Below, one piece after another: positions 12,686 through 34,105 of a stretch of DNA of 64,000 nucleotides. The DNA lies in the sequence record NC_061449.1, one strand, 5' to 3'. The position numbers and the translations under genes are program-made. The notes beneath the pieces were generated by a model. That model worked only from the letters and a program-made list of their open reading frames with translations, made no database searches and was not told the origin of the DNA. Positions within the stretch are counted from its first letter, which is position 1; each line of letters opens with the position of its first letter.

Positions 12686-13456
12686 ATGAGCAACGTTGAT
12701 AAAACAATGCCAGAAGGTCGCTGGGAGTTCAATGAGCCAGTTGCTGCTGTGTTCGATAACATGCTGCAAAACTCAATTCCTTCCTATGATCGTATGCGCG
12801 ATCTGACCTATCGTCTCGGTCGCCAGTTCGTAACTCCTGGTTCAGCTATCGTTGACCTGGGCGCTTCACTCGGCCGTGCTATCGAACCGTTCTGTGCTGA
12901 GTTCGGCGAGTACATGTATCTTCACGCTGCTGATCGTCCTGAGCCTGATCGTGAAGTTGGCAACATGTATTGCTGCTACGAGGTCGCGCCAGCAATGCTG
13001 GAGCGTCTGCGTGAAAACCCTGTGCTGAAAACGGCTAAAGCGAAAATCAGTAGCGAGTCGCTGGTGGAAGTAGACACGTTCCGCTTCGGCGAGCAGGTAG
13101 AGTGTTCGCTCATTCTGTCTGTGCTTACTCTCCAGTTCACGCCGATTGAGCACCGTCAGCACATTTTGGAGAAAGTGTACGACTCGTTGCAGAAAGGCGG
13201 TGCGTTCATTCTCGTTGAGAAAGTGTTGGGTGACGACAACTTCCTCGACCGTCTGCTTGTTGATACTTACTACGGCATGAAGGGCGACAACGGTTATTCG
13301 CAAGAGAGCATTGCGACGAAACGCAAAGCGCTTGAAGGTGTACTCGTACCTGTCAAGGCCGCGTGGAACGAAGAACTGCTGCGCAAAGCAGGCTTCGACC
13401 GCGTTGAATGTTTCTACCGCGATCTTAACTTCGCCGGATGGATCGCAATTAAGTAA
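12686..13456 (+). CDS. cmoA: carboxy-S-adenosyl-L-methionine synthase (CmoA family)
   Basis: WEFNEPVAAVFDNMLQNSIPSY, DLGASLG, TLQF, LVEK, NGYSQESIATKRKALEGV parallel E. coli CmoA ([51 protein letters not shown]), including the Arg199 equivalent. Confidence 0.9.
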   Translation: MSNVDKTMPEGRWEFNEPVAAVFDNMLQNSIPSYDRMRDLTYRLGRQFVTPGSAIVDLGASLGRAIEPFCAEFGEYMYLHAADRPEPDREVGNMYCCYEVAPAMLERLRENPVLKTAKAKISSESLVEVDTFRFGEQVECSLILSVLTLQFTPIEHRQHILEKVYDSLQKGGAFILVEKVLGDDNFLDRLLVDTYYGMKGDNGYSQESIATKRKALEGVLVPVKAAWNEELLRKAGFDRVECFYRDLNFAGWIAIK

Positions 13457-13463
13457 GGGAAGT

Positions 13464-14729
13464 ATGATGAAAGTAAACGGGCGTATCTTAGCAATCGTGC
13501 CACACAAGACCCTCCAGGACAGGACTAAGTCTGGTGTTGGTGCGTACATTGATGGACTTGAAGCGTACGGCTTCTGCGACTTCATCACTGACGGTGAAAA
13601 CAGCTCTGTCACCAAGAGCCTGTGGTTTAACTACGGTGATACCACTCTAAGCGACGGTTACAAAGTTGGTCACATCCAGAGTGCTCTGCTTGAAGCGCTC
13701 GACCGCATTCCGTATCGTGCAATTATTTGTAGCACCTACGAAGCTGTCGAAGCTGCTGTCGGTCTTGGTCTGCCTAAGATTATGCCCGTTTACTATCGTT
13801 CACACAACAGCTTCCTGTTAACGCAGGACCTGAATGGGCTTGGTGCTGAGAAGATGCACCGTGCGTTGCTGCAAGCGCCTGTGACTGGTCTGCGCATCTT
13901 AGCGAACTGTGATTCAACTGCGCGTGTGCTGTCTGAGATTTATAAAACTGAGGCTGCTGTCGCGTATAACGCATTCAGTGTATCTGACTACAATCCACCT
14001 GCGAAACGTAAACCTTCGCTGTTGATTATCTGTCGCTACGAAAAGGTTAAGCGTCCTGCGTTTGCTGCGCGTATCGCTGCTGCGTCTGGCTTACCTGTTC
14101 GTGTTATGACCGGCTCTGATCGTCAGGTCAAAAGCTGGGAGAAAGAGCTTGCTGATGCAGGCGTAAAAGATTACCAAGTCGTCAGTGGTTTGTCTGGTGA
14201 CGAGAAGATGGCGTTCATCGGACAATGTACCGTAGCGCTGTCATGTGCCGAAGTAGAGTCATTCGCTAACGGTGTGCGTGAGACTATCCCGTACTGCCCG
14301 ACGTTCGTTGTGCAAACTTCTAAGTACGATTGGGCGCGAGACTATACGCGCTTCTGCTCTGAGAACAAGCACATCCACATTCGCACTGTTGATCGTGTGA
14401 CTGCGAAAGAGGTGGAAGAACTGGGCAATGAGATTGCTTACTGGGCCCGCACCAAGTATCTGACTAAAGCTGAACGCGTTACGCTGCTGACCGAATGGTG
14501 CAAGCGCGTGGACAAAGGCTGGGCCGACTTCATGAAGAATGCAGTCGTGCCTGATGACGGCAAGCCGATGAAGACCGACCTGTCGAAAGAACTCGAAGAA
14601 AAAGGCGTAGTAGATTGGTCGAAGACGCAGACGTTAATGCGTACTGTAAAAGCTATACACAAGTGTCATGCTCGTATGGGCTTGACGTTCGATGGCACCA
14701 AAATCAAAACGAAAGGGAGGAAGAAATGA
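13464..14729 (+). CDS. GT-B fold glycosyltransferase (GT4-like)
   Basis: N-terminal SGVGAY, LLIICRYEKVKRP (R…K donor-binding pattern), ESFANGVRE (E-x7-E motif). Confidence 0.75.
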   Translation: MMKVNGRILAIVPHKTLQDRTKSGVGAYIDGLEAYGFCDFITDGENSSVTKSLWFNYGDTTLSDGYKVGHIQSALLEALDRIPYRAIICSTYEAVEAAVGLGLPKIMPVYYRSHNSFLLTQDLNGLGAEKMHRALLQAPVTGLRILANCDSTARVLSEIYKTEAAVAYNAFSVSDYNPPAKRKPSLLIICRYEKVKRPAFAARIAAASGLPVRVMTGSDRQVKSWEKELADAGVKDYQVVSGLSGDEKMAFIGQCTVALSCAEVESFANGVRETIPYCPTFVVQTSKYDWARDYTRFCSENKHIHIRTVDRVTAKEVEELGNEIAYWARTKYLTKAERVTLLTEWCKRVDKGWADFMKNAVVPDDGKPMKTDLSKELEEKGVVDWSKTQTLMRTVKAIHKCHARMGLTFDGTKIKTKGRKK

Positions 14730-15757
14730 GCGTGATTGGTGATATCTATAATATTCCGCAACCGTACGCGATGTTCTGTGGTAACGCCACGACGAAAGCA
14801 ATGGCGAAGATCACTGCCGGTATGGTTGAGTGGGCGTCAGAGAAAGTCTGCTGTGTAGTTGACGATGCTAATAACCTGTTCCCTGAAATGCCTCACGTTG
14901 AAATTCGTGACCTCAATAAGACCGATGCAGAAACTCTGGTCATCGGGTTTGCGCCTTTTGGCGGTCAGATTAACGAAGACATTGATCGCGCTATCTGCGA
15001 AGCATTGAAGCGTGGCCTGAACGTTGCTGCTGCTCTGCACGTCAAGCTGTCTGACAATCCTAAATACTTCGCTCTAGCTCGTGAGCATGGGGTATCGCTG
15101 TATGACTTCCGCCACCACCCTGAGCAATATCCTCTGGGCACTGGTCTTCCTCGTGCCGGTGTTCGTGTTCTTACTGTTGGTACTGACTGTTCGTGCGGTA
15201 AGAAATTTACTGCACTCGCACTGACTAAGAAGCTGACCGAGCTGAAACAGAAAGCTGTGTTCTGTGCTACCGGTCAAACTGGTTTTCTGATTAGCGGTCG
15301 CGGCATCAACAACGACACTGTGGTCGCTGACTTCCTTGCTGGTGCTGCTGAGTGGCTGTCACCTGCTGACGAAGAAGCTATCTATCTGATTGAAGGTCAA
15401 GGTGCGTTACGCCATCCGGCGTACACTGGTGGCAGCATGAGTCTGATTGCTGGCTCCCAGCCCGACGCTATCGTTGTCTGCCACACTGTTGGCCGTAACT
15501 TCATGATGAACACCGAGCGCGAGATCAACATCGTTGACGAGATCTCTGCTAATCTCGCTGCTGCCGCAATGCACGACTGGTACCCGAAAGTCGTCGGTAT
15601 CAGTATCAACTTCTGCGAAGTGAAGATGACGAAGAAAGAGCGCGAAGTATATTTGCGTAATCTTTCTAAAAGCAGTGGTTACGTGGCGTTTGACCCACAA
15701 GCTGGCGGTGAAGAGTTTGACCGTGTTGCGCACTACATCACGACGCTCAAACGCTGA
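14726..15757 (+). CDS. DUF1611 family protein (DgcN-like, P-loop)
   Basis: VLTVGTDCSCGKKFTALAL, ATGQTGFLI, DFLAGAAEWL, IEGQGALRHPAY, GSQPDAIVVCH; ATGA overlap with the GT gene. Confidence 0.85.
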   Translation: MSVIGDIYNIPQPYAMFCGNATTKAMAKITAGMVEWASEKVCCVVDDANNLFPEMPHVEIRDLNKTDAETLVIGFAPFGGQINEDIDRAICEALKRGLNVAAALHVKLSDNPKYFALAREHGVSLYDFRHHPEQYPLGTGLPRAGVRVLTVGTDCSCGKKFTALALTKKLTELKQKAVFCATGQTGFLISGRGINNDTVVADFLAGAAEWLSPADEEAIYLIEGQGALRHPAYTGGSMSLIAGSQPDAIVVCHTVGRNFMMNTEREINIVDEISANLAAAAMHDWYPKVVGISINFCEVKMTKKEREVYLRNLSKSSGYVAFDPQAGGEEFDRVAHYITTLKR

Positions 15758-16701
15758 TGAAAGTCTTAATCGACAATGCCGCGTTAGCGAGTAATGCGGC
15801 CTATTTAAAATCACTCGCTCCGTCCATGATTCCGGTTGTGAAAGGTAATTTCTACGGTCATGGTTTAGATTGTGTGAGAGCATTCTCCTTAGGGTTTGAG
15901 GTGCTCGCTGTCCATAGCGACCGCGAAGCACTTGCGCTGCGTGAACTCGAACTCGACCACACGCTGTTAATTCTCGGCGGTGTATACGGTCGCATGTGGA
16001 ATACAGTGCCTGTTCTGAACGCAAAGCAAGTCGGCAAGTATGAAGGACGATACGCTGTGTTTGCTGATTGGGGCTGTCGTCGCATCAACGTCAAGCCCGA
16101 AGATCTCACGCACCCACCCGCGTTGATTCTTGTTCACTCGGATGACTATCGTGTGCCTGTGTCTGAGTACGACGCTAATGAGATCGCACAACGCTACAAC
16201 GTGCCACTGTCTATGCTGTCTGTAGGCTCAAGCATGAACGTGCTCGATCAATATTCACCGAAGTTGAAACCTCGTGTCGGTATGGCAATTACCGGATATA
16301 GTAGCGATGAAACTGTGAACGGTAATTTGTGTGTAGCGAAGACAGTGCTTGCTCGTACCTGCGATAAGCTGGATGCGGGTCGAGTATTCGGTTACGGTGC
16401 GTTGGTGCCTAACAGCGCAGACAAGTTCCTGTACTCGATTGATGTTGGTTATTACGATAACCTGTATCAGTCCAACAAGAACACACCTGTGTATTGTCCT
16501 GATGCACCACATGCACAGGTCACGCTTCTCACAGGCGTTGCCAACGCAATCAGCATGAACCATGCCTTCGTATTGTCAGATATCGAGCTACCGTTTGACT
16601 CTGAGATTGAAATACTCGGACCTAACGTTCGCGCAGACTATCTGGCTAAACTCCACGGAACAACAACTGCGAATATTTTAAGGCTGGGTAATCATGGCTA
16701 A
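15757..16701 (+). CDS. alr: PLP-dependent amino-acid racemase (alanine racemase family)
   Basis: PVVKGNFYGHG (PLP Lys), EALALR, FGYGA (catalytic Tyr), GYYDN, ISMNH. Confidence 0.85.
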   Translation: MKVLIDNAALASNAAYLKSLAPSMIPVVKGNFYGHGLDCVRAFSLGFEVLAVHSDREALALRELELDHTLLILGGVYGRMWNTVPVLNAKQVGKYEGRYAVFADWGCRRINVKPEDLTHPPALILVHSDDYRVPVSEYDANEIAQRYNVPLSMLSVGSSMNVLDQYSPKLKPRVGMAITGYSSDETVNGNLCVAKTVLARTCDKLDAGRVFGYGALVPNSADKFLYSIDVGYYDNLYQSNKNTPVYCPDAPHAQVTLLTGVANAISMNHAFVLSDIELPFDSEIEILGPNVRADYLAKLHGTTTANILRLGNHG

Positions 16702-17563
16702 ACACGTTTTGCGCAAGCTGTTTGAACAGCACGTTAAAGCAGAGGTCAAAGATGACAAGGTGGCAGTGCTGCTGTCCAGTGGTCTTGACGGACTTGTTAG
16801 CGGGCTTGCTGCCCATGACTTAGGAAAGAAGGTACACGCCTTTACTTTCCAAATGGGCGACAACGAAAGTTTCGACAGCAAACACGCACGTAAAGTCGCA
16901 GAGAAGATGGGATGGGAGTTCACGCTTGTGAAAGTCCCTACGTCTGACAGCGCTATCGTACAGGGTTGGAAAGCGCTTCACGCGAAGTACCGTTGCGTTA
17001 AGAAGCGCGACTATGAGTGCGCATATCCTATGGTGTATTGCTACAAGGCAATCAAGGATGCAGGTTACAAGTATGTACTGAGCGGCCTTGTCGCTGATGC
17101 CTACTTCTGTTTTGCGCGTAACACTCACATCGCTAAAATCAGCGGACCGCACAGCGTACTCGAAAAGTTCGACGAGTACCGCAAAGCATATTGGGCACCG
17201 TGGTTCAAGAGCGGTAAGAAGTCTCTCGGCGTTGATGGATATAACCCTAGCGGTATGCTGCAACACGAAATGCTGTGCGACTCTTTCGGTCTGACGCACG
17301 TTAACCCGTGGCTGATAAAGAAAGTCCATGACTACTTCATTGGTCGTTCATGGCAAGAACTAAATCAACCCAAGCAGAAAATGCCAATAACAGAAGCATG
17401 GGCTGATCACATCGCGGTTGTAGGCCATCGCCCGCATCGCGGTTATCAAACAGAAGCTGGAGTACCTGCGTACTTCGAACGCTTACTGGATAATCCTGAG
17501 ATCAACTTCAACGGTCGCAAGCGTGTTATGGACCTTGCCCGTGATTGGTCAACGAGGACTTAA
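16694..17563 (+). CDS. asparagine-synthetase-like ATP-dependent amide ligase (synthetase domain only)
   Basis: VAVLLSSGLDG PP-loop, HAFTF…DSKHARKVAEKMG, YVLSGLVADAYF (cf. VLSGEGADELF); no N-terminal glutaminase domain. Confidence 0.8.
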   Translation: MAKHVLRKLFEQHVKAEVKDDKVAVLLSSGLDGLVSGLAAHDLGKKVHAFTFQMGDNESFDSKHARKVAEKMGWEFTLVKVPTSDSAIVQGWKALHAKYRCVKKRDYECAYPMVYCYKAIKDAGYKYVLSGLVADAYFCFARNTHIAKISGPHSVLEKFDEYRKAYWAPWFKSGKKSLGVDGYNPSGMLQHEMLCDSFGLTHVNPWLIKKVHDYFIGRSWQELNQPKQKMPITEAWADHIAVVGHRPHRGYQTEAGVPAYFERLLDNPEINFNGRKRVMDLARDWSTRT

Positions 17564-17564
17564 C

Positions 17565-18185
17565 ATGTTAGTACACATCATTGACGGAAACGTGGGCGGT
17601 AACTATGTGTTCCACAAGCTGCAAGAGTCTGGTATCAACGCGCGTGTCCATGCGCCTAGTGACCCACGCCGCCGTGCAGTAGCAGCAACCTACCCTTCGC
17701 TGTCTATGGGATTTACTCCCGAAGAGATCGAGAAGCATATCGGTAATGTGCTTGGCACCTATCGAGGCCTGTTCTTGATTAGCAGTTATGTAGGTTCGCT
17801 GGTGGCTCGTAGCATGATTGACCAGTGTGGTCAGAGTCATAACATCATTTATTGCGATGATCTACAGTGTGGGTCTATGCCTGTTGTTGCTTCCTCAATT
17901 TCTGTAAATGTATATCAGAAGCAACGACGACTCGGACGTATTGCAGGTAGACTCAAACACTTCGACCTCGACCACGAATTTATTATCGCTGATAAATCAG
18001 TGCGATTTGCGTCAGGTTCAGAGTTTGATGAACACGGCGCGCGTGAAGAACTGGACGATACGCCTAAGTTTCTATCGAGTCCGTCAATGATTGTTGCTGC
18101 ACACAAACTCGGTGTGAAGCGCAGCATGTATCACAACTATGCAGGTCTGGTGCGAGAGTTCCTTGAAAAGCGCCAGCAGCAATAA
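17565..18185 (+). CDS. hypothetical protein, possibly degenerate Asp/Glu racemase (MurI) fold
   Basis: N-terminus HIIDGNVGGNYV resembles MurI IFDSGVGGLSV; the canonical catalytic CNT is not present (ISSYVGS instead). Confidence 0.55.
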   Translation: MLVHIIDGNVGGNYVFHKLQESGINARVHAPSDPRRRAVAATYPSLSMGFTPEEIEKHIGNVLGTYRGLFLISSYVGSLVARSMIDQCGQSHNIIYCDDLQCGSMPVVASSISVNVYQKQRRLGRIAGRLKHFDLDHEFIIADKSVRFASGSEFDEHGAREELDDTPKFLSSPSMIVAAHKLGVKRSMYHNYAGLVREFLEKRQQQ

Positions 18186-18197
18186 CGCGAGGGCACG

Positions 18198-18461: not shown

Positions 18462-18468
18462 GGGCACG

Positions 18469-18924
18469 ATGAACCTGTTTTCTATTTTAAAGCAGCAAGT
18501 GAAGAAAGCGCTATCAACCGAAGCGAACCACGAGCCTGAGATTCGCTCTCTGTTCGACTGGCGTTACTCTGTGGAAATCAAAGGCCAGATGTATATCGTC
18601 GGTAAGACTGGCGCTAACACCTGCTTCTATATCGAGCCAGGTACTTCTGAGCCTATCGCTTGTTACCCTGATGCGTTACTCGAAAAGATCGACGAGTGGG
18701 GAGCGAGCAAGTACGTGTCGTATTCGATCTTCTTCAAACGCTTCGATAGCCCTGTTGCTGAGAACATCAAAACTCTCGAAAAGGCAATGAGCGGCAAACC
18801 GAAGACCTTTAAGAAAGGCTACTTCATCTGTGGTGTGACACCGAAAGGCAAGCGTGAGAAACTCTATCGCTTGCAGCAAGGTCTGTCAGGTATGCAGTGG
18901 GTAGCTGTGGAGAAACAAGCATGA
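18469..18924 (+). CDS. hypothetical protein
   Basis: ATG after GAGGG RBS. Confidence 0.6.
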   Translation: MNLFSILKQQVKKALSTEANHEPEIRSLFDWRYSVEIKGQMYIVGKTGANTCFYIEPGTSEPIACYPDALLEKIDEWGASKYVSYSIFFKRFDSPVAENIKTLEKAMSGKPKTFKKGYFICGVTPKGKREKLYRLQQGLSGMQWVAVEKQA

Positions 18925-19130: not shown

Positions 19131-19159
19131 CGCACGGTCTGTCCGTGTGAGGAGCAAGT

Positions 19160-19890: not shown

Positions 19891-19895
19891 CTGAA

Positions 19896-20984: not shown

Positions 20985-21827
20985 ATGACCGTAATCAGTC
21001 CAATCCGTTATCAGGGCAATAAGCGAAGCCTTATCCCTCTTATTCTTGAGCACACACCAAGCGTACAAGACTGTCCGCGTATGGTCGATGTGTTTGGTGG
21101 TAGTGCCACTGTGTGCGCTAACATGCCTCAGAAGTTTCGTGTGTACAACGAGCTTAGTCCTCAGGTGTTTGAGATCGTTAAGATGCTGGTTGAGCAAGAC
21201 CCGAAGAAAACTCTCGGTCAAGTCAAGCGTCTGGTAAAACACTGGTGCCTGACAAACAGCAACGAAGCGAACTATGATGCGTTTCGAACTGTCGTCCAGA
21301 AGAAGCGTACACCGATATTGCATTACGTTGCACACAGACATGCGCACTCGAATATGCTGCGCTTCAACCAGCAGGGTGTGTACAACGTAGGCTTTGGTGA
21401 TCGTGGTCTGATTGGAAAGTTCGACGAGCTGGAGCACGAACTCACTACTTTCCACAGTCACATGCAGGGTGTCCACCTGACGAACATGAAGTACGGTAAG
21501 TTACTGAGTCGCTTAGGCCACCAACTGAACTACAACACGTTCTGTTACTTCGACCCGCCGTATCTGGCGAGCGGTGCAATGCAGTACGGCAAGTGGACTG
21601 AAACGAATGAGCGTAACCTGCTTGCTACTCTGGAGCAACTCAATCGCTTAGGCGTACCGTGGATGTTGAGCAACGTAACCGAACACCGACACTTCTCAAA
21701 CGATTTGTTGAAGCGCTGGTTAAAGAAACACGCAACGACCGTGTTGTACCCGAACAAAAGCTATGCGATGAACAATGGCCAGAGTGGCTCGCATGGTACT
21801 GTTGAAATTCTGGCAATGAACTACTGA
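20985..21827 (+). CDS. dam: DNA adenine methyltransferase (Dam / D12 class)
   Basis: SPIRYQGNKRSL, DVFGGSATV, YFDPPY; GATC specificity not established. Confidence 0.88.
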   Translation: MTVISPIRYQGNKRSLIPLILEHTPSVQDCPRMVDVFGGSATVCANMPQKFRVYNELSPQVFEIVKMLVEQDPKKTLGQVKRLVKHWCLTNSNEANYDAFRTVVQKKRTPILHYVAHRHAHSNMLRFNQQGVYNVGFGDRGLIGKFDELEHELTTFHSHMQGVHLTNMKYGKLLSRLGHQLNYNTFCYFDPPYLASGAMQYGKWTETNERNLLATLEQLNRLGVPWMLSNVTEHRHFSNDLLKRWLKKHATTVLYPNKSYAMNNGQSGSHGTVEILAMNY

Positions 21828-24044: not shown

Positions 24045-24550
24045 ACGAATTACCGATGAACCTCGATCAGGCTGAACACATCATGGCCAGTGTGTTTACG
24101 CTTGCTGGCGCATCGAAGTCTAAACGCCGCGCTACCGCTGCGATGTTGATTCACTTCCACAATGGCTTCCCTACTGTGATCAGTAGCGGTGTTAACGGTA
24201 CTGAGCCTGGTGCAAGCAACGTCATGGAGAACGAAGACCTGACTCTTTCTCTCGACACAGTTATCCATGCAGAGGTGAACTGCCTCAACCGCATGGAAGA
24301 ATACAGCATGTGGGCGAACGAAGAAGACATTCTGTTTTGCACCGACTCACCGTGCCCGAACTGTCTTGCTGACCTCGAAGCCGAAGGCGTTAAGACCGTT
24401 GTGTACGCGCGTGAGTATCGCCTGACTGATCATCTGGACGCATCTCCCATCAAGATGTTCTGTCTGGATATGGACAGCGTTGTCCAGCGTATGCAGCACG
24501 GCATCGACCGCATCAAAGAAGTGATCGCAACAACACCAGCGTCTAACTAA
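24029..24550 (+). CDS. dCMP deaminase-like zinc deaminase
   Basis: SSGVNGT, HAEVNC and SPCPNC zinc motifs, VVYAREYR. Confidence 0.85.
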   Translation: MRCNLNELPMNLDQAEHIMASVFTLAGASKSKRRATAAMLIHFHNGFPTVISSGVNGTEPGASNVMENEDLTLSLDTVIHAEVNCLNRMEEYSMWANEEDILFCTDSPCPNCLADLEAEGVKTVVYAREYRLTDHLDASPIKMFCLDMDSVVQRMQHGIDRIKEVIATTPASN

Positions 24551-27848: not shown

Positions 27849-28198
27849 TGCCTCCTGTAATTCGTTTCAACGAACAAACCTGCGAACTGCTGAAAAAGAC
27901 TTTCGGCATTGATTCACCTTTCATTGTCGTGCGTCGTGAGCGCATCATCGAAGACGGTAAGCCTTTCGGTGAGCGTGTCTATTTGAACAACGGCATTCAC
28001 ACCGTGACTGTGCCTAACGTACAGGGTCTCGACTTCGGCGATAAGCTGTATCTCGCCGAAGATATGGAAGTGTATGAGTGGCACCCGCACTTCGGCCTTC
28101 ATCCTACCATTCATCATTCTGTAAGCAATAACCAGAAGACTGCGCTCTCGTTCGGCCTTCATCCTATCATCTACCATAAAGACAGTCGGAACTCTTAA
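27848..28198 (+). CDS. hypothetical protein with duplicated C-terminal FGLHP motif
   Basis: 16-bp direct repeat TTCGGCCTTCATCCTA at 28091 and 28151. Confidence 0.6.
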   Translation: MPPVIRFNEQTCELLKKTFGIDSPFIVVRRERIIEDGKPFGERVYLNNGIHTVTVPNVQGLDFGDKLYLAEDMEVYEWHPHFGLHPTIHHSVSNNQKTALSFGLHPIIYHKDSRNS

Positions 28199-29298
28199 TG
28201 AACAAGCAACCTCTTGATCTGCGCGATCCAAATCAATACGAAGTTTACTCTCTGCACTGCGTAGACGAACAGTACATCAACCTAGGCAACGCTATTCTGG
28301 CGTGTGGTACTGACGAATCAGATCTCGGTCGCACCGAAGATACGTGGCGTACTCTGATTGGCGTCGGCTTCCAGTTGTCTAATACACTGATCGCTTTCCC
28401 TGCGCTGCTGTCTGCACGTAAGAACTGGTTCGCTGCTGTGGATGAAACCTGCTGGTTCATGCGCGGCGACACGAACATCAGCACTCTCCAGTCTAAAATC
28501 TGGAACGAATGGGCAGATGAAGAAGGCGAATGCGGTCCTATCTACGGTGAGATGTGGCGGCGCTGGCCTGACCTGAAAGCGTACTACGACTACACGCAAC
28601 CACAGCACTCTGAGCCTACTGCTGAGATGATTCGTGTGCGTAACGAAATCCTGCGTATGCGCGAAGACGGGTATATCGAAACGCAACTGACTGACGGGCG
28701 CATTCTGTTCGAAGGTCAGATTGACCAGTTCGCTAACGCACTGCATCAGGTTATGGCGCGTTCTCGCTCTCGTCGTATTCGCGTTCAGGCATTCAACCCT
28801 GCGTATCAGAACATGCAGGGTCTGCCTCCGTGTCACACCGAATTTGAGTTCAATGTGACTCAGCCTACTCAGTACGAGATCGCACAGATGGAAGCGCGCG
28901 GTATGGCTCCGTCTGACGCATCGTTGCATATCGTTGTGACCATGCGTTCCAATGATGTGCTGCTCGGGCGCCCGTTCAACATCATGGGCTACAGCGCGAT
29001 GCACCAACTGATTGCCAAGTGGGCTGGGTTGAACGTAGGTAGCTTTACGCTGAACACGACGAACACGCATCTGTATACGCATCACTTCGAAGCGTTCGAA
29101 CAGCAGAAGCAACAATGGGCGGCGCTCAGTGACCTGATGAAGAAAACTGGTCAGCCTATTCAATACCCGCTGCTCGAAATCAGCGACGACATTCTCGGCC
29201 TAACGCCAGAAGAGTTGCTGGACAACGCAACGGTCGAGTGGTTCCAACTTCTCGACTACTCCCCTGCACCAGCAGTCAAAGGGCGTGTTACCAAATGA
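28198..29298 (+). CDS. thyA: thymidylate synthase
   Basis: IWNEWADE…GPIYGEMWRRW, RR, LPPCH catalytic Cys, RSNDVLLGRPFNI, HLY. Confidence 0.92.
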   Translation: MNKQPLDLRDPNQYEVYSLHCVDEQYINLGNAILACGTDESDLGRTEDTWRTLIGVGFQLSNTLIAFPALLSARKNWFAAVDETCWFMRGDTNISTLQSKIWNEWADEEGECGPIYGEMWRRWPDLKAYYDYTQPQHSEPTAEMIRVRNEILRMREDGYIETQLTDGRILFEGQIDQFANALHQVMARSRSRRIRVQAFNPAYQNMQGLPPCHTEFEFNVTQPTQYEIAQMEARGMAPSDASLHIVVTMRSNDVLLGRPFNIMGYSAMHQLIAKWAGLNVGSFTLNTTNTHLYTHHFEAFEQQKQQWAALSDLMKKTGQPIQYPLLEISDDILGLTPEELLDNATVEWFQLLDYSPAPAVKGRVTK

Positions 29299-29945
29299 AT
29301 AACGATAACTTCATTTTGATTAAACGCCTGAGTGCGTTCCTATATGTGGGGTATGCAGAGCAGGAGCTGTATATCCCACGTCGTGGCGTTCAGAGCATTC
29401 ACGTTGTCATTCCTGATCCGAAAGGTGATGACGAACCTATTCTGGACATGCAGGCGCGTTGCATCTATCATCTGCCGCACAACTGTTTCATTCTGCAAGC
29501 AACGCAGAACGACGAAGCCTCTGAGTCAATGTGTGCTATGAAGTCGCATTGCAAGTACAACGAAGGTCTGTTCCAGAAGTCAGTACACGGCCGCGAGCAA
29601 GCTGCCCTTAACCTGATTATGAACGAGCTGCGTGACGCAGAAACAGATCACCCGACGTGGCCGGAAGAATGTATTCACGCTGCGTCCATTGTCGTCGAAG
29701 AAGCAGGTGAGTTGCTGCGGGACTGCGCTACGTTTGAAGAAAACGGTGATGAACGTCTGATCGTTAACATGCAGTTGGAAGCGGTGCAGACAGGTGCAAT
29801 GGCAGTGCGCTTCATTAAGAATCTGCCGTTCAGCCAGAAGCGCACTATCCCACACAACGCTCTGCGTTCTATCCTCGAATCTGAAATGTCGCCAGAAGAA
29901 CAACTGATTGAGTTGCGTCGTCTGGTGCAAAATGGAGTGAGCTGA
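29295..29945 (+). CDS. protein with C-terminal MazG-like (all-alpha NTP pyrophosphatase) domain
   Basis: HPTWPEE…IVVEEAGEL…LEAVQTGAMAVRF. Confidence 0.65.
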   Translation: MNNDNFILIKRLSAFLYVGYAEQELYIPRRGVQSIHVVIPDPKGDDEPILDMQARCIYHLPHNCFILQATQNDEASESMCAMKSHCKYNEGLFQKSVHGREQAALNLIMNELRDAETDHPTWPEECIHAASIVVEEAGELLRDCATFEENGDERLIVNMQLEAVQTGAMAVRFIKNLPFSQKRTIPHNALRSILESEMSPEEQLIELRRLVQNGVS

Positions 29946-30835
29946 TGAAACTGTTAGGCTACGCTGCCTGTGGCGGCACACCCTTTCGTATTCTGCGTGT
30001 AGAAGACGCAGGTAAACTCACTGACGGTACGCACGAACGTATTGACCTGTTCGACTGTATCTTCACTAACGTTGACGTGTCGCACGACATTGATACAGGT
30101 CATGCTATTCTCTCGCTGCCTGAACCTACTGACTGGCGTGTCGATATGACCAGTAAGATGTTCACTAAAGAATACATGGACTGGTTCAACGGTTACACAC
30201 CGACAATCGAAGTCCTACTGAACGCCCACAAGCTGAAAGCGATTCTGCCGAACATCACGCAGGAGTTTGACCAGTTCGTTGTGTGGCTGAAAGAGCAAAT
30301 AGCGAAGATGCCAACGCTCGAAGTTGAGTTTAAGCACGACACACTGAAAGCTGTTAAGACAGGCAACAAGTACGACATTTGGATGTTGTACAAACACTAT
30401 CTGATGGTTGACGGCAATCTGATTGTGACGCGTAACCCTGAAGGTGATGTTATCTTCCACGATGCGCACATCTCTGAAAAGGGTACGCAACATTGGTTGC
30501 TTGAGCACAACAAAGAGATGATGCGCCTAGCAGCAGAAAACGATCTGCTTGCTGCATACATCACGTTCGGCGTTGACCGTGGTGCGCCTAAGTACCAGTA
30601 TACGTTCGTTGCCCGCGACGGTGGTTACACGACTCGTCCTGTAGATGATGCAGAGTTCACGCACATCTCAATTCGCGGTCAGATGCCTGTCGTGTTGTTC
30701 AAAGACGAAGGCGCTAATCTGAATCTCACTGTGAGCATCGAACAGCACTTCCCTCAGAAGTATCTGGACTTTGAACGCAGTGCTCGGCCAACAATCGGCT
30801 ACAACCATGCACTAAATCTGATTCGTTTCATCTGA
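29945..30835 (+). CDS. hypothetical protein
   Basis: 296-aa coupled ORF. Confidence 0.65.
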   Translation: MKLLGYAACGGTPFRILRVEDAGKLTDGTHERIDLFDCIFTNVDVSHDIDTGHAILSLPEPTDWRVDMTSKMFTKEYMDWFNGYTPTIEVLLNAHKLKAILPNITQEFDQFVVWLKEQIAKMPTLEVEFKHDTLKAVKTGNKYDIWMLYKHYLMVDGNLIVTRNPEGDVIFHDAHISEKGTQHWLLEHNKEMMRLAAENDLLAAYITFGVDRGAPKYQYTFVARDGGYTTRPVDDAEFTHISIRGQMPVVLFKDEGANLNLTVSIEQHFPQKYLDFERSARPTIGYNHALNLIRFI

Positions 30836-30885
30836 GGCGCTGTCTCTTGTTCAGCATAATTTGATTATCTAACAGGAGACTTGCC

Positions 30886-31221
30886 ATGAAATATGATCCG
30901 AAGAAAGACTTTCACCCTTTTCAATATCTGGGTGCACCTAAAGTTCCGCACACAGGCTTCTTAGGCAGCACAGTGAACTTAGTCGAGAACGACGTAAACA
31001 TCGGTCAAGACGAATGCACGTTTGAGTTTACTGTCGCCCAGATGAATGAGATGGACAGAGGTACTGTTACGTTCCGGGCGAAAGACTCGGGCGGAGGTAT
31101 CGACATTAAGAAATGCTCGGTCTCTGGTCTGAAAATGGTAATTAAGCTGGACCGTCGTGTTGTGCAGTTCGGCAAAGTTCAGGTCGAATGGCAAACGACA
31201 CCCCGACACTATTACTACTAA
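30886..31221 (+). CDS. hypothetical protein
   Basis: AGGAG RBS, 111 aa. Confidence 0.6.
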   Translation: MKYDPKKDFHPFQYLGAPKVPHTGFLGSTVNLVENDVNIGQDECTFEFTVAQMNEMDRGTVTFRAKDSGGGIDIKKCSVSGLKMVIKLDRRVVQFGKVQVEWQTTPRHYYY

Positions 31222-31263
31222 TCTGTAAAGACAGAGAAAGAGCAACCGAAAAGAGATACGACA

Positions 31264-31974
31264 ATGGCAAAAACTGCTATCAAAGCAAAGGAAGGGAAAA
31301 AGAAAAAGAACGACGGACTAAAGTTTGAGTTGAAGAAACTCAACTCCGTCGCCCAGTTGAAAGGTGCAGCGTACAACCCACGCTTCATTACAGACAGTCG
31401 CCTGAAAGCGCTCGAAGGTTCTTTGGGTAGTTTCGGTGACCTGTCTGGTATCGTGTTCAACAACAACGTCAAATCGGGCGTGTTGATCTCTGGCCACCAG
31501 CGCCTGAAATCAATCGAGGGCTGGAAGACTCGCATCGAGGTCCAGAAGTCTGTTGATAAGCACGGTACAATCGGTCTGGGCTACATTCACGCAACGCATC
31601 CAAAGAAAGCTGATAAGGTGATCAGCATTCCTCTGCGTATCGTGAACTGGACCGATAAGAAAGCTGAGTATGCTGCAAACATCGCGGCGAACGCTCACGG
31701 CGGTGAGTTCGATAACAAGAAACTCGCCAAGCTGGTTGAACAGCTCGACCTCAACACAATCAAGCCTCAGTTACTTGGTCTTGACCCGTTAGAGATTCGC
31801 GGCCTGCAACAAAAGCTGAAAGTACAGGCTGTTGTGCAGGACGAAAAACGCGCTGGCAAGACTACCGGCCAGATGAACGGTAGTACCGGTAAGTTCAATG
31901 AGTACAACGCCGATGATGTTGGCGATACTCTGAACTGCACCTGCCCGCGCTGTGGATTTAAGTTCGAGGGATAA
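31264..31974 (+). CDS. ParB/sulfiredoxin-like N-terminal domain protein with C-terminal CPxCG zinc knuckle
   Basis: LKGAAYNPRFI…SLGSFG…LISGHQRLKSI; ends CTCPRCGFKFEG; directly upstream of the C5-MTase. Confidence 0.8.
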   Translation: MAKTAIKAKEGKKKKNDGLKFELKKLNSVAQLKGAAYNPRFITDSRLKALEGSLGSFGDLSGIVFNNNVKSGVLISGHQRLKSIEGWKTRIEVQKSVDKHGTIGLGYIHATHPKKADKVISIPLRIVNWTDKKAEYAANIAANAHGGEFDNKKLAKLVEQLDLNTIKPQLLGLDPLEIRGLQQKLKVQAVVQDEKRAGKTTGQMNGSTGKFNEYNADDVGDTLNCTCPRCGFKFEG

Positions 31975-31975
31975 T

Positions 31976-34105
31976 ATGATCATCAAGCCGCCTACGATGA
32001 AGGAAATCAACAAGCTGGATAAACCCTGGCGTGGTATGAGTTTCTTCGCAGGTTGCGGTGGTTCTTCTACCGGCCACAAGATGGCCGGTATCAACATCTT
32101 GCTGAGTAACGAGTTTGTTGACCCAGCAAGAGAGTCATATGAAGCGAACCACCCGACAACTAAAGTGCTGCCTCATGACATTCGCCGCCTCGATCCCGGT
32201 AAGCTGTTACGTTACTGCGGTCTCGATAAAGGCGAACTTGATTTACTTGACGGTAGTCCTCCATGCTTCACCGAAGACACTATCATTCATACAGCAGACG
32301 GCATGAAGTTCATCTCGGACATGAACGTCGGCGACAGAGCGATGACCAGTGTCGGGCAGTATTACCCCGTATACGACACAATGGTCAGACCGTATGTCGG
32401 TACGATGCACAAAGTTGAAACGCTGATCAGCAGTAACAAGGCGACGCCAGAGCATCCGTTCTTCGTTAGACGTGCTCTGGCCGAAGGTGGTTACTCTGAC
32501 CCGTTCTGGTGTGATGCGAAAGACGTGCAGGAAGGCGACTTGCTTGGCACTCCTCGAGTTACTCCAGACCAACAGCCGGGTGTGTATTACGATCAGATTG
32601 CGCAACTGCCTAAGACGATTCAGCAGTGGGTGAGCATTCCTGAGTTCTGGTGGATGGTGGGGCACTGGTGCGATCGGGGTTCAATCGAAACCGTTAGCGG
32701 CATTGAAGTCGTTAGCTTCGAATCGCATACCAGTCTTGAGAACGCGATGATTGAGCAGGCGTTTGACGCGCTCAAACTCAGTAGCCTGAATCGTATCGAC
32801 ACGATGACTGCGCAACGTAAAACGTTCCGTACTGTTATCGATGCAGAGCTGGTACAGTTCTTGCGTCGTTTCGTAAGTCAGGGCAACAACACGTTCTCCC
32901 GTCGTCTTCCTGCAATGATGTTCCACATGAGCGCCGAGCTGAAACAACAATTCATTCTCGGTTGTGCTGGGCATGACTATGTGACTGCTATGGGCACGGG
33001 TCTAGCGATCACATCAAGCAGCAAACGCTTCCTGCTTGAGCTTAACTACCTGTGCTGTTCTGCTTTCAATCGCCCTCTGTTTAACGGTATGATTTGGGGT
33101 GATGTTTACTTCGGTAGCACCATGACACCCCGCGAGCGTAACAGTTCGCGTGAGCATATAGGCTACCTGTTCCTGCAGGACGAGCACAACTTCTTCCACG
33201 AGTTCAGTGATAGCGATTCGCATCTCTGGACCGAAGTGATTGAGAACCTTGCGTATCAAGCAACGTGCGACGTGTACAATTTCTCTGTTGAAACAGACGA
33301 AACGTATGTGGCTAACGGTGTTGTAGTCCACAACTGCAAAGGCTTCTCGACTGCTGGTGTAAAAGAAGAAGGCTGGGGCAAAGAGGTTAAGTACAGCGAC
33401 AATAAATATCAGCAGGTGGATGACCTGTTCGATCAGTATTGTCGTATGCTGCAAGGCATGATGCCTAAGGTGTTCACGGCAGAAAACGTTAGTGGTCTTG
33501 TGAAGGGGATCTCGAAAGGGTATTTCCTTGAGATCATGAAGACGTTCGACAAGCTCGGTTATTATGTACGAGCGCCAATGCTGAATGCCTGTTGGCTAGG
33601 TGTACCTCAGTCGCGTGAGCGTATCATCTTCATGGGTGTGCGTAAAGACATAGCCCATGCGCTTGGCTATAAGTCGGCTCGCGAGGCTGTGCCTGATGTT
33701 ATCCCGTGCGATACGCAAGCCTTCCTGGGTGATGCGTTGCCTCACATCTTACGATACAAGACGACGCAGAAAGACCTGATCAAGTATCTGCCTGCAATTA
33801 ACGGACCGATGCCTACGATTACAGCGTCTGATGCAATCGCGTATGAAACCGCGCGTTTCTCGTCTGCTGGGTTTATCGAAGATAACAAAGGCCATCGCCG
33901 TAAACTGACCATCGACGAACTGCTGGTAGTATCTGGAATGCCGTCTGACTATAAGCTGGTTGGCAAATTCGAAGAACAGTGGGAACGTCTTGGTCGTGTC
34001 TGTGTGCCAGCAATGACACACGCAGCATCGAAGGCTTTCATCGAACATATTCTTTTGCCTTACGCGAAGAAGAAAAAGAAAAAGCCCGGCGATATATTTA
34101 AATAA
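31976..34105 (+). CDS. C5-cytosine DNA methyltransferase family, intein-split; candidate carboxymethyltransferase
   Basis: Motif I FFAGCGG, IV GSPP-C (split by intein), VI AENV, VIII QSRERI, IX RKLTIDEL, motif X ERLGRVCVP (Arg where GN[AS]V has Asn); ATG at 31976 after GAGGG. Confidence 0.9.
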   Translation: MIIKPPTMKEINKLDKPWRGMSFFAGCGGSSTGHKMAGINILLSNEFVDPARESYEANHPTTKVLPHDIRRLDPGKLLRYCGLDKGELDLLDGSPPCFTEDTIIHTADGMKFISDMNVGDRAMTSVGQYYPVYDTMVRPYVGTMHKVETLISSNKATPEHPFFVRRALAEGGYSDPFWCDAKDVQEGDLLGTPRVTPDQQPGVYYDQIAQLPKTIQQWVSIPEFWWMVGHWCDRGSIETVSGIEVVSFESHTSLENAMIEQAFDALKLSSLNRIDTMTAQRKTFRTVIDAELVQFLRRFVSQGNNTFSRRLPAMMFHMSAELKQQFILGCAGHDYVTAMGTGLAITSSSKRFLLELNYLCCSAFNRPLFNGMIWGDVYFGSTMTPRERNSSREHIGYLFLQDEHNFFHEFSDSDSHLWTEVIENLAYQATCDVYNFSVETDETYVANGVVVHNCKGFSTAGVKEEGWGKEVKYSDNKYQQVDDLFDQYCRMLQGMMPKVFTAENVSGLVKGISKGYFLEIMKTFDKLGYYVRAPMLNACWLGVPQSRERIIFMGVRKDIAHALGYKSAREAVPDVIPCDTQAFLGDALPHILRYKTTQKDLIKYLPAINGPMPTITASDAIAYETARFSSAGFIEDNKGHRRKLTIDELLVVSGMPSDYKLVGKFEEQWERLGRVCVPAMTHAASKAFIEHILLPYAKKKKKKPGDIFK
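32264..33334 (+). mobile_element. intein (357 aa) with degenerate LAGLIDADG-like region, inserted at the catalytic Cys
   Basis: Starts CFTEDT, block B ATPEHPFFV, block F/G VYNFSVETDETYVANGVVVHN, +1 residue Cys (the catalytic PC Cys). Confidence 0.92.

What the first reader, a model, noticed from the sequence alone, without database searches (positions are those of the whole stretch)
12686..34105. Candidate phage DNA hypermodification pathway: carboxymethyl-cytosine further decorated with a (D-)amino acid and/or sugar
Seen in sequence: a translationally coupled operon at 12686-18185 (CmoA, GT-B glycosyltransferase, DUF1611, alanine racemase, asparagine-synthetase-like ligase, MurI-like ORF), plus a ParB-like gene and a C5-cytosine MTase with an Asn-to-Arg change in motif X at 31264-34105. 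Established: CmoA makes carboxy-SAM from SAM and prephenate; AsnB-type PP-loop domains adenylate a carboxylate and form amides; Alr makes D-amino acids; DUF1611/DgcN acts on D-Glu. Inference: Cx-SAM feeds the MTase to give 5-carboxymethyl-C, the ligase amidates the carboxyl with a racemase-derived D-amino acid, and the DUF1611 protein and/or GT add further acyl or glycosyl groups. I recall reports of phage CmoA-dependent cytosine carboxymethylation, so the core step may be known. A D-amino-acid / glycosyl extension would be the novel part. Alternative: the operon modifies virion proteins, tRNA or the host envelope.
Basis: partly seen in the sequence, partly recalled or inferred. Interest (0 to 1): 0.95.

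Follow-up and report, generated by a model that had tools for sequence, protein, structure and literature searches.

The report
Extended carboxymethyl-cytosine DNA hypermodification gene set
This Erwinia jumbo phage carries the recently published three-enzyme system that puts a carboxymethyl "handle" on DNA cytosine and amidates it, plus three conserved extra enzymes (a D-amino-acid N-acyltransferase relative, an amino-acid racemase and a sugar transferase) that predict a larger DNA base modification not yet described.

Summary
The window is Erwinia phage pEa_SNUABM_17 (Alexandravirus), bases 1-64000.
- CmoA
- a GT-B/GT4 glycosyltransferase
- a DUF1611/DgcN-family protein
- an alanine-racemase-family enzyme
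- an AsnB-like ligase
- a ParB-like protein
- a C5-cytosine methyltransferase homologue with Arg where HhaI has Asn

"MurI-like" is not supported: gp022 is an orphan.

The core pathway is already published (Yang et al., Nat Commun 2025, PMC12783734: CmoA, CmoX and CmoY make 5-carboxymethylcytosine-glycine amide in Synechococcus phage S-B43). That paper does not mention DUF1611, a racemase or a glycosyltransferase.

Here a distinct CmoY clade always sits beside a phage-only DUF1611 clade. The racemase and the GT4 are independent add-ons, and all four presence/absence combinations occur. In unrelated metagenomic phages these genes lie directly between CmoX and CmoY/CmoA.

The locus is therefore best read as an extended 5cxmC tailoring pathway that probably involves a D-amino acid and a sugar. 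The order of steps and the final structure are inferred, not shown.

Verdict: new variant of a known kind. It can be tested directly by LC-MS on cultured phages that carry different cassette variants.

The parts
12686..13456 (+). gp017, CmoA homologue (carboxy-SAM synthase)
   Evidence: PDB 4GEK (E. coli CmoA) 5.8e-30 over residues 11-256. TIGR00740 CmoA 2.2e-42 (145 bits, below the 193 cutoff). PHROG 4752 3.4e-80. 30% identical to SpCmoA.
13467..14729 (+). gp018, GT-B fold, GT4-like retaining glycosyltransferase
   Evidence: AF2 model pLDDT 82.2, pTM 0.81. Foldseek PDB top hits include tll1591, GlgM, SenB, BshA, MshA and TarM at E about 1e-10. Invariant E264-x7-E272. Homologue P0006 carries PF00534.
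14726..15757 (+). gp019, DUF1611 / DgcN-family protein (phage-specific clade)
   Evidence: Pfam DUF1611_C 6e-49 and DUF1611_N 2e-18. NCBIfam DgcN 7e-89, below cutoff. PDB 7XRJ 4.9e-58. P-loop GTDCSCGKK conserved. Phage sequences form a clade with 100/100 support, separate from bacterial ones.
15757..16701 (+). gp020, compact alanine-racemase-family PLP enzyme
   Evidence: Family profile matches PDB alanine racemases over the full length (4QHR 1.4e-13). It also hits serine racemase VanT, lysine racemase and a broad-spectrum racemase. K29, R173, Y213 and M267 are invariant.
16694..17563 (+). gp021, CmoY-type ATP-dependent amide ligase (AsnB C-terminal domain only), distinct clade
   Evidence: Pfam Asn_synthase 8e-15. 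34-36% identical to SpCmoY (5e-52). The clade has a deviant PP-loop, SSGLDG, instead of SGGVDS, and a roughly 10-residue insertion.
17565..18185 (+). gp022, orphan protein; membership in the pathway uncertain; not MurI-like
   Evidence: No hit in any library. Only 5 clusters in 1.8e9 representatives. Present after the cassette in AD1, Y3, SNUABM_5, L028 and L111. Absent from SNUABM_25, L012, L015 and L108.
18469..18924 (+). gp024, unknown 151-aa protein that accompanies Cmo cassettes (candidate member)
   Evidence: Homologues lie directly after the cassette in L012 (27%), L015 (48%) and L108/L109 (32%), and in all jumbo-phage variants. PHROG 23597, no function.
31264..31974 (+). gp048, ParB-like DNA-binding protein directly upstream of CmoX
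   Evidence: PHROG 620 ParB-like 3.8e-32. Homologues lie directly upstream of CmoX in L013 (43%) and near it in L108 (44%). The ParBc association with CmoX is reported in PMC12783734.
31976..34105 (+). gp049, CmoX (DNA cytosine C5-carboxymethyltransferase homologue) precursor, 709 aa; 352 aa after splicing
   Evidence: Best PDB hit 8YF3 (SpCmoX) 1.8e-52. SPPC, ENV and QxRxR motifs are present. Arg674 aligns with SpCmoX R350.
32264..33334 (+). Intein (357 aa) inserted so that the catalytic Cys of motif IV is the +1 extein residue
   Evidence: Pfam Hint_2 and Intein_splicing. TIGR01443 intein C-terminus 4.6e-6. Sequence reads 'CFTEDTII...VVVHN|CKGFSTAG'. In metagenome loci the same site is occupied in L011 and empty in L013.

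Best explanation
The two loci (12.7-18.9 kb and 31.3-34.1 kb) together encode an extended version of the CmoA/CmoX/CmoY cytosine hypermodification pathway.

Inferred from close homology to characterised enzymes:
1. CmoA makes carboxy-SAM from SAM and prephenate.
2. After its intein splices out and restores the PPC catalytic motif, CmoX transfers the carboxymethyl group to C5 of cytosine in phage DNA. The motif-X arginine holds the cofactor carboxylate.
3. The CmoY-type ligase adenylates that carboxylate and forms an amide.

Inferred from conserved gene linkage only:
4. A phage-specific DgcN-family (DUF1611) enzyme is an obligatory partner of this CmoY clade. Its only characterised relative makes N-acetyl-D-glutamate from acetyl-CoA and D-glutamate. 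It is therefore predicted to create an N-acyl-D-amino-acid linkage on or for the appended group.
5. The alanine-racemase-family enzyme supplies the D-amino acid where host pools do not suffice.
6. The GT4 enzyme adds a sugar from an NDP-sugar.

The predicted end product is a 5-carboxymethylcytosine amide carrying a D-amino-acid-derived and glycosylated substituent. Its presumed role is to shield phage DNA from host nucleases. The order of steps 3-6, the identity of the amine, amino acid and sugar, and the target sequence are unknown.
For: Homology of the core:
- CmoA.
- CmoX: best PDB hit is SpCmoX with Arg at the R350 position.
- CmoY: 34-36% identical to SpCmoY.
- ParB upstream of CmoX, as reported for CmoX neighbourhoods.
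- Biochemistry of the S-B43 enzymes: PMC12783734.

Linkage of the extra genes:
- L012: CmoX-GT-DUF1611-CmoY-CmoA, contiguous.
- L108/L109: CmoX-DUF1611-Alr-CmoY-CmoA, contiguous, in a different phage of about 100 kb.
- L015/L017: CmoA-GT-DUF1611-Alr-CmoY.
- L029: GT-DUF1611-CmoY.
- L028: CmoA-DUF1611-CmoY.

Co-occurrence:
- 34 phage records hold DUF1611 and 34 hold a CmoY at least 80% identical.
- The same 9 IMG/VR contigs hold both.
- All 50 Erwinia/Dickeya records with a CmoY-type ligase are matched in number by records with CmoX.
- Phage DUF1611 proteins form one clade with 100/100 support.

Other support:
- Catalytic residues are intact in the racemase and the GT4 EX7E motif is intact.
- A related cassette carries a DAHP synthase next to CmoY, which fits precursor-supply genes travelling with the pathway.
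Against: - There are no chemical data for this phage or any relative. I found no paper on DNA modification in Alexandravirus.
- In the window CmoX lies about 13 kb from the cassette.
- The characterised DgcN acts on a free amino acid with acetyl-CoA. How such an enzyme would act on DNA or on a ligase product is not obvious.
- The CmoY clade has a non-canonical PP-loop (SSGLDG), so even its ATP-dependent ligase activity is assumed.
- The acceptor of the GT4 is unknown. A simple amino-acid amide offers a hydroxyl only if the residue is Ser, Thr or similar.
- CmoA, DgcN and Alr hits all score below NCBIfam equivalog cutoffs.
- The intein's endonuclease motifs look degenerate, and splicing is assumed.
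Confidence: 0.68

Rival explanations
1. The pathway stops at a simple 5cxmC amide, as in S-B43. DUF1611, the racemase and the GT4 are unrelated auxiliary or host-takeover genes (D-amino-acid or envelope metabolism) that happen to sit in a hypervariable hotspot.
For: The position around 13 kb is a variable hotspot in this phage group, with at least five different cassettes. DgcN is a catabolic enzyme in bacteria. Alanine racemase and GT4 enzymes are classic cell-envelope enzymes.
Against: The genes lie between CmoX and CmoY/CmoA in unrelated phages with different backbones (L012, L108). The DUF1611 clade and this CmoY clade co-occur in every case: 34 and 34 records, the same 9 contigs, and 6 metagenome loci. 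The phage DUF1611 clade was found only in the Cmo context: 2 of 80 metagenome DUF1611 loci had it, and they were the two closest relatives.
Confidence: 0.12
2. DUF1611, the racemase and the GT4 do not act on DNA. They build or supply the small-molecule amine that CmoY ligates, for example a glycosylated or N-acylated D-amino-acid derivative. This would resemble mycothiol/bacillithiol-type assembly, which combines a GT4, a ligase and an acetyltransferase.
For: The top structural neighbours of gp018 include small-molecule GT4s (BshA, MshA, SenB, tetrahydrobiopterin glucosyltransferase). DgcN acts on a free D-amino acid. The CmoY clade has diverged from the glycine-using SpCmoY, with an insertion and an altered PP-loop.
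Against: The CmoY sequence stays 60-84% identical whether or not the GT and racemase are present. This is hard to reconcile with amines that differ by a sugar. All four GT/racemase combinations exist, which points to optional late decorations.
Confidence: 0.15
3. The system modifies RNA (tRNA), protein or virion components rather than DNA.
For: Bacterial CmoA serves tRNA cmo5U synthesis. RefSeq labels gp017 'tRNA methyltransferase'.
Against: The associated transferase is a C5-DNA-cytosine MTase homologue. It is closest to SpCmoX, which was shown to modify DNA, and it is preceded by a ParB-like DNA-binding protein. No CmoB-like gene was seen among the window genes I scanned.
Confidence: 0.03

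Closest known systems
CmoA-CmoX-CmoY system of Synechococcus phage S-B43 (5-glycylcarboxymethylcytosine; Yang et al., Nat Commun 2025, PMC12783734; SpCmoX structure PDB 8YF3)
   Same: Homologues of all three enzymes are present. CmoX keeps SPPC and the Arg that replaces HhaI Asn304. The ligase lacks the glutaminase domain. A ParB-like gene is associated. The phage carries its own CmoA.
   Different: - CmoX is split by an intein and lies about 13 kb from CmoA/CmoY.
- CmoY belongs to a separate clade (34-36% identity, PP-loop SSGLDG, insertion).
- The cassette adds a DgcN-family protein, an alanine-racemase-family enzyme and a GT4 glycosyltransferase. None of these is mentioned in that paper or its supplements.
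DgcN of the DgcN-DgcA D-glutamate catabolic pathway (Yu et al., ISME J 2023, cited in PMC12363236; NCBIfam NF041892; probable structure PDB 7XRJ)
   Same: Full-length similarity (7e-89; 7XRJ 4.9e-58) and the same two-domain DUF1611 architecture and P-loop. A link to D-amino acids is suggested by the adjacent racemase.
   Different: - It scores below the equivalog cutoff (298 vs 480 bits).
- It sits in a separate, phage-only clade.
- No DgcA racemase/epimerase partner is present.
- The context is DNA modification, not catabolism.
- Substrate and acyl donor are unknown.
Hydroxymethyl-pyrimidine hypermodification systems (T4 5hmC glucosylation by GT-B enzymes; amino-acid or polyamine-decorated thymidines of SP10, phiW-14, M6, ViI). 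Recalled from my own knowledge and from the discussion in PMC12783734.
   Same: The logic is the same: install a reactive handle on a pyrimidine C5, then decorate it with sugars or amino compounds using GT-B transferases and ligases. The decoration genes vary among related phages.
   Different: The handle is a carboxylate installed post-replicatively from Cx-SAM, not a hydroxymethyl group installed at the nucleotide level. The window's ThyA homologue keeps the dUMP-type Asn (PFNI), so it is not a dCMP hydroxymethylase.
Engineered M.MpeI N374K carboxymethyltransferase (Kohli laboratory; cited in PMC12783734)
   Same: A basic residue replaces the motif-X Asn and allows use of Cx-SAM.
   Different: The window's enzyme is natural, carries Arg rather than Lys, and belongs to a multi-enzyme pathway.

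Membership tests
CmoA/CmoX/CmoY 5cxmC hypermodification system (PMC12783734) | Phage-encoded CmoA (Cx-SAM synthase) homologue | tested here: met
   4GEK 5.8e-30. TIGR00740 2.2e-42 (below the curated cutoff). 30% identity to SpCmoA.
CmoA/CmoX/CmoY 5cxmC hypermodification system (PMC12783734) | C5-MTase homologue with an SPPC motif and Arg at the position of SpCmoX R350 / HhaI N304 | tested here: met
   8YF3 is the best PDB hit (1.8e-52). 'GSPP|C' is restored by intein removal. Arg674 aligns with R350.
CmoA/CmoX/CmoY 5cxmC hypermodification system (PMC12783734) | AsnB-like AMP-forming amide ligase without a glutaminase domain | tested here: met
   Pfam Asn_synthase 8e-15. 289 aa. 34-36% identity to SpCmoY. 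Its PP-loop deviates (SSGLDG).
CmoA/CmoX/CmoY 5cxmC hypermodification system (PMC12783734) | 5cxmC or its amide is chemically present in virion DNA | not testable with these tools
   Needs LC-MS/MS of digested phage DNA.
CmoA/CmoX/CmoY 5cxmC hypermodification system (PMC12783734) | The amine substrate is glycine (the 5gcxmC product) | not testable with these tools
   The glycine-pocket residues are shown only in figure images. The distinct CmoY clade suggests the substrate may differ.
DgcN (D-glutamate N-acetyltransferase, NF041892) | Scores above the equivalog cutoff and sits with DgcA in a D-Glu catabolic context | tested here: not met
   298 bits against a cutoff of 480. Separate phage clade. 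Its neighbours are Cmo genes, and no DgcA-type gene lies in the cassette.
DUF1611 superfamily (PF07755 + PF17396) | Both domains above the Pfam gathering score; P-loop present | tested here: met
   166.6 and 66.7 bits. GTDCSCGKK is conserved.
Alanine racemase family (PLP fold type III) | N-terminal barrel plus C-terminal domain, with the PLP Lys, the pyridine-N Arg and the catalytic Tyr | tested here: met
   The profile matches the full length of 4QHR (1.4e-13). K29, R173 and Y213 are invariant. It scores below the alr equivalog cutoff, so substrate specificity is open.
GT4 retaining glycosyltransferases (GT-B fold) | Two-Rossmann GT-B fold and the EX7E motif | tested here: met
   Foldseek hits at about 1e-10 to GT4 structures. 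E264-x7-E272 is invariant. The sequence-level signal is weak (PDB profile E 0.007).
Glutamate racemase MurI / Asp-Glu racemase superfamily (claimed for gp022) | Detectable similarity to the family and two catalytic cysteines | tested here: not met
   No hit in Pfam, NCBIfam or PDB, with the single sequence or the profile. Only one invariant Cys (C97).
Class 1 intein | Cys1, C-terminal His-Asn, and a +1 Cys/Ser/Thr | tested here: met
   'C-FTEDTII...VVVHN|C'. TIGR01443 4.6e-6. Intein-less allele at the same site in L013 and intein-containing allele in L011. Splicing activity was not tested.

The most novel reading that the evidence does not exclude
Alexandravirus-type phages decorate DNA cytosine with a peptide-like or glyco-amino-acid group built on 5-carboxymethylcytosine. 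The group contains a D-amino acid made by a phage racemase and attached or capped by a DgcN-family enzyme recruited from D-amino-acid catabolism, and a GT4 adds a sugar. I know of no earlier report of a D-amino acid in a natural DNA modification or of a DUF1611 enzyme acting in nucleic-acid modification; no search was run on either point. Natural cassette variants (with or without the GT, with or without the racemase, or with an oxygenase instead) would give a graded series of structures on near-identical genomes.
Probability: 0.4. Interest if true: 0.85.

Novelty: new variant of a known kind. Interest (0 to 1): 0.65.

Why it matters
The carboxymethyl handle on cytosine was shown only in late 2025. 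Its authors expected further amide decorations but characterised only glycine. This locus points to a specific, conserved and more elaborate branch, made of a DgcN-family enzyme with an optional racemase and an optional GT4.

Three things make it useful:
- It occurs in cultured Erwinia and Dickeya jumbo phages. These come as a natural series of cassette variants on nearly identical backbones, so comparative LC-MS could assign each gene's contribution quickly.
- It would give a biochemical role to the phage branch of DUF1611 and could add D-amino acids to the chemistry of natural DNA.
- Such modifications determine sensitivity to restriction and other defences. That is relevant because these phages are being developed as fire-blight biocontrol agents.

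Tried and rejected
- MurI-like identity of gp022: rejected. No hit in Pfam, NCBIfam, PHROGs or PDB with the single sequence or the profile. The AF2 model was too poor to use (pLDDT 42). An exhaustive profile search found only 5 small unannotated clusters.
- The GT acting on a 5hmC route: the ThyA homologue gp044 keeps the dUMP-type 'PFNI' Asn and PPCH and matches true thymidylate synthases, so it is not a dCMP hydroxymethylase. A dUMP hydroxymethylase cannot be excluded.
- Do racemase-associated DUF1611 proteins form their own subclade, which would argue for a changed substrate? The tree within the phage clade is unresolved.
- Glycine-pocket residues of SpCmoY: sought in the paper's supplements for comparison, but they appear only in images.
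- The original DgcN paper is not in the library. DgcN chemistry therefore rests on the NCBIfam name, on PMC12363236 and on my own recollection.
- IMG/VR scans with DUF1611 and CmoY-clade profiles returned only the same nine Alexandravirus-like genomes.
- A scan of 185,579 species genomes with the CmoY-clade profile found nothing.
- Promoter and terminator consensus scans were at background level and uninformative.
- No further modification-related genes were found among the other window ORFs I scanned.
- A literature search found no work on DNA modification in these phages.

Full report
**Identity of the window.** Region 12686-18185 is 100% identical to Erwinia phage pEa_SNUABM_17 (MZ443777 / NC_061449.1; 263,916 bp; genus Alexandravirus; host Erwinia amylovora). 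Window coordinates equal record coordinates. RefSeq annotates the genes of interest as 'hypothetical protein', except gp017 ('tRNA methyltransferase') and gp048 ('ParB-like partition protein').

**Checking the observation.**
- The junctions are ATGA, TGATG, an 8-nt overlap and a 1-nt spacer, which fits translational coupling. The whole 1-45 kb region is co-directional, so 'operon' boundaries are not defined by strand. Consensus promoter and terminator scans were at background.
- gp017 is a CmoA homologue: E. coli CmoA 4GEK 5.8e-30, TIGR00740 2.2e-42 (below the trusted cutoff), PHROG 4752 3e-80.
- gp019 has both DUF1611 domains (6e-49 and 2e-18). It matches NCBIfam DgcN (7e-89, 298 bits against a cutoff of 480) and PDB 7XRJ (4.9e-58) over its whole length.
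- gp020 gives weak single-sequence hits to alanine racemase. A profile of its seven-member family matches PDB alanine racemases end to end (4QHR 1.4e-13). It also hits VanT serine racemase, lysine racemase and a broad-spectrum racemase. The PLP lysine (VVKGNFYGHG), Arg173 (PRVGMA..GY), Tyr213 (GYG) and Met267 are invariant.
- gp021 is an Asn_synthase PP-loop domain without a glutaminase domain (8e-15).
- gp018 has no Pfam hit and only marginal sequence hits to GT4 enzymes. An AlphaFold model built on its eight-sequence family (pLDDT 82) has a GT-B fold. All 50 Foldseek hits listed are GT-B-fold enzymes, mostly GT4-type (tll1591, GlgM, SenB, BshA, MshA, TarM; about 1e-10). The family keeps an invariant E264-x7-E272, the GT4 EX7E signature.
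- gp048 matches PHROG ParB-like families (3.8e-32).

**The methyltransferase.**
- The best solved-structure match of gp049 is 8YF3 (1.8e-52), the published carboxymethyltransferase SpCmoX. HaeIII and HhaI are far behind.
- Counting along the alignment, Arg674 in 'LGRVCVP' aligns with R350 of SpCmoX ('VGRMVPP'). According to the paper this residue replaces HhaI Asn304 and contacts the Cx-SAM carboxylate.
Residues 97-453 are an intein (Hint_2, Intein_splicing, TIGR01443) that reads 'CFTEDTII...VVVHN' and is followed by Cys454. Removing it gives a 352-residue protein with a canonical motif IV, 'GSPPCKGFSTAG', so the catalytic cysteine is the +1 extein residue.
- Two metagenomic alleles of one related CmoX show the same site occupied (L011, 743 aa) and empty (L013, 341 aa, 'GSPPCSAFSNAG').

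**The one failed call.** gp022 is not MurI-like. It has no hit in Pfam, NCBIfam, PHROGs or PDB, as a sequence or as a profile, and it has only one invariant cysteine. Its AlphaFold model is unusable (pLDDT 42). An exhaustive profile search of 1.8 billion representatives found only five clusters of 205-216-residue proteins. It follows the cassette in several jumbo-phage relatives but is absent from SNUABM_25 and from the unrelated metagenomic cassettes. I treat it as a lineage-specific neighbour of unknown role.

**What is already known.** Yang et al. (Nat Commun, December 2025, PMC12783734) showed the following in Synechococcus phage S-B43:
- CmoA makes Cx-SAM.
- CmoX carboxymethylates C5 of cytosine in GC motifs.
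- CmoY, an AsnB-like ligase, amidates the product with glycine.
- Virion DNA contains the glycine amide.
- ParBc proteins often accompany CmoX.
- Other ligase clusters probably use other amines.

The window's proteins are homologues of all three enzymes: CmoA 30%, CmoY 34-36% (5e-52), and CmoX 30% and 56% in its two extein parts. Neither the paper nor its supplements mentions Erwinia, DUF1611, a racemase, a glycosyltransferase or inteins. I found no later paper on CmoX/CmoY and none on DNA modification in these phages.

**Evidence that the extra genes belong to the pathway.**

1. Cassette variants within the Erwinia/Dickeya jumbo phages. The position after CmoA is a hotspot with at least five cassettes:

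| Type | Example phages | Gene order |
|---|---|---|
| A | window, SNUABM_1, 3, 20, 23, 31, 32, 40 | CmoA-GT-DUF1611-Alr-CmoY-gp022 |
| B | AD1, Alexandra, SNUABM_16, 18, 22, 28, 33, 2910A | CmoA-DUF1611-CmoY-gp022 |
| C | SNUABM_25 group | CmoA-GT-DUF1611-CmoY |
| Y3 type | Y3 | CmoA-divergent ligase-2OG-Fe(II) oxygenase-gp022 |
| SNUABM_5 type | SNUABM_5 | CmoA-divergent ligase-gp022-like |

CmoX stays 77-98% identical across all of them. The counts of records with CmoX (48 Erwinia + 2 Dickeya) equal the counts with a CmoY-type ligase. The AD1 genome paper lists the methyltransferase, the asparagine synthase, the DNA-cytosine methyltransferase and its upstream neighbour as jointly absent from the relative JA11.

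2. Strict pairing of DUF1611 with one CmoY clade. DUF1611 occurs in 34 phage records, all of this group, and 34 records have a CmoY at least 80% identical. In IMG/VR the same nine contigs hold both.

3. Contiguous arrangements in unrelated metagenomic phages:

| Locus | Gene order |
|---|---|
| L012 | CmoX-GT-DUF1611-CmoY-CmoA |
| L108/L109 (a phage of about 100 kb) | ParB...CmoX-DUF1611-Alr-CmoY-CmoA |
| L015/L017 | CmoA-GT-DUF1611-Alr-CmoY-DAHP synthase |
| L029 | GT-DUF1611-CmoY-...-GNAT |
| L028 | CmoA-DUF1611-CmoY-gp022 |

Protein identities to the window are 36-48% for the GT, 46-57% for DUF1611, 38-51% for the racemase and 60-78% for CmoY.

4. All four combinations of GT and racemase presence occur on a constant DUF1611 + CmoY core.

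5. Phage DUF1611 proteins form one clade with 100/100 support, apart from bacterial DgcN-like sequences. Of 80 metagenomic DUF1611 loci, only the two closest relatives have Cmo neighbours.

6. The CmoY-clade profile found no relative in 185,579 species genomes.

This pattern is far from chance. It argues that DUF1611 is an obligatory partner of this ligase clade, and that the GT4 and the racemase are optional modules.

**Mechanism.**
- Steps 1-3 (Cx-SAM synthesis, carboxymethyl transfer by spliced CmoX, ATP-dependent amide formation) follow from homology to characterised enzymes.
- This CmoY clade has a conserved non-canonical PP-loop (SSGLDG instead of SGGVDS) and an insertion of about 10 residues. 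Its nucleophile, and even its dependence on a partner, may therefore differ from SpCmoY.
- The only characterised DUF1611 member, DgcN, N-acetylates D-glutamate and related D-amino acids with acetyl-CoA. This rests on the NCBIfam name, on PMC12363236 and on my recollection of Yu et al. 2023, which I could not read.
- The DUF1611 P-loop (GTDCSCGKK) resembles that of the dethiobiotin-synthetase/CobQ class of ATP-dependent carboxylate-activating enzymes. This comparison is from my own knowledge. A ligase-like role is therefore also conceivable.
- In all three lineages that have the racemase, it sits between DUF1611 and CmoY and overlaps both neighbours. The gene order therefore does not say which enzyme it serves.
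- Phages without the racemase could draw on host D-Ala or D-Glu pools. The DAHP synthase next to CmoY in L015 (TIGR00034 above cutoff; its match starts at about profile position 47, so it appears to lack the N-terminal segment) shows that precursor-supply genes do travel with this pathway, in that case presumably for prephenate.
- Most likely reading: the DgcN-type enzyme creates an N-acyl-D-amino-acid linkage on the appended group, either by capping a free D-alpha-amino group or by coupling a D-amino acid to an activated carboxyl. The racemase feeds it, and the GT4 adds a sugar last.
- A more speculative variant is that CmoY activates the carboxylate as a thioester or adenylate that the DgcN-type enzyme transfers to a D-amino acid.
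- None of these steps is shown.

**Rivals.**
- The extra genes could build a small-molecule amine before ligation. Small-molecule GT4s are among the closest structural neighbours of gp018. Against this, CmoY stays highly conserved whether or not the GT is present.
- They could be unrelated auxiliary genes in a hotspot. The contiguous CmoX...CmoA arrangements in unrelated phages contradict this.
- The target could be something other than DNA. The identity of CmoX and its ParB neighbour contradict this.

**Verdict.** The core is already known and the extension is undescribed. It is a new variant of a known kind, of good interest because it is concrete, conserved and immediately testable on cultured phages that form a natural series of cassette variants.

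Noticed in passing
window 32264-33334 (within gp049); L011:7783-10014 vs L013:1712-2737: A 357-aa intein sits exactly at the catalytic cysteine of the carboxymethyltransferase, so the PPC Cys is the +1 extein residue. A metagenomic relative exists both with and without an intein at the same site. The LAGLIDADG-like motifs in the window's intein look degenerate ('VGHWCDRGS') compared with L011 ('VGRFLGDGW').
   Followed up: partly
L015:14162-15025 (also L017): A phage-encoded DAHP synthase (TIGR00034 above cutoff; 287 aa; its match starts at about profile position 47, so it appears to lack the N-terminal segment) lies directly after CmoY. It plausibly boosts shikimate-pathway flux to prephenate, the CmoA co-substrate. 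No counterpart was seen in the window.
   Followed up: partly
window 18469-18924 (gp024); L012:4499-4978, L015:14991-15434, L108:11554-12006: A 150-aa protein family of unknown function (PHROG 23597) lies directly beside Cmo cassettes in four otherwise unrelated phage lineages. It may be an unrecognised pathway component.
   Followed up: partly
window 16694-17563 (gp021) and homologues: The DUF1611-associated CmoY clade has an invariant non-canonical PP-loop, SSGLDG, instead of SGGxDS. It also has an insertion of about 10 residues ('GKKSLGVDGYNPSG') that SpCmoY lacks.
   Followed up: partly
L010 (Erwinia phage Y3) 5821-7616; L009 (pEa_SNUABM_5) 5863-7394; L029:10557-11465: Other cassettes at the same hotspot pair CmoA with divergent ligases and, in Y3, a 2OG-Fe(II) oxygenase. 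The metagenomic L029 cassette has a GNAT acetyltransferase after CmoY. This suggests several different 5cxmC decorations within one phage group.
   Followed up: partly
window 28198-29298 (gp044): This gene is annotated 'hypothetical' but is a thymidylate synthase homologue (Pfam 1.2e-54; TIGR03284 above cutoff) with large insertions (366 aa). It keeps PPCH and the dUMP-type Asn (PFNI). A dCMP deaminase (24056-24550) and a Dam-type N6-adenine MTase (20985-21827) lie nearby.
   Followed up: partly
window 17565-18185 (gp022): A strongly conserved orphan: 28 invariant positions across 16 sequences, including D7, R37, S74, S78, D86, C97 and D143. Only five representative clusters were found in 1.8 billion proteins, and no confident fold could be predicted.
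   Followed up: yes
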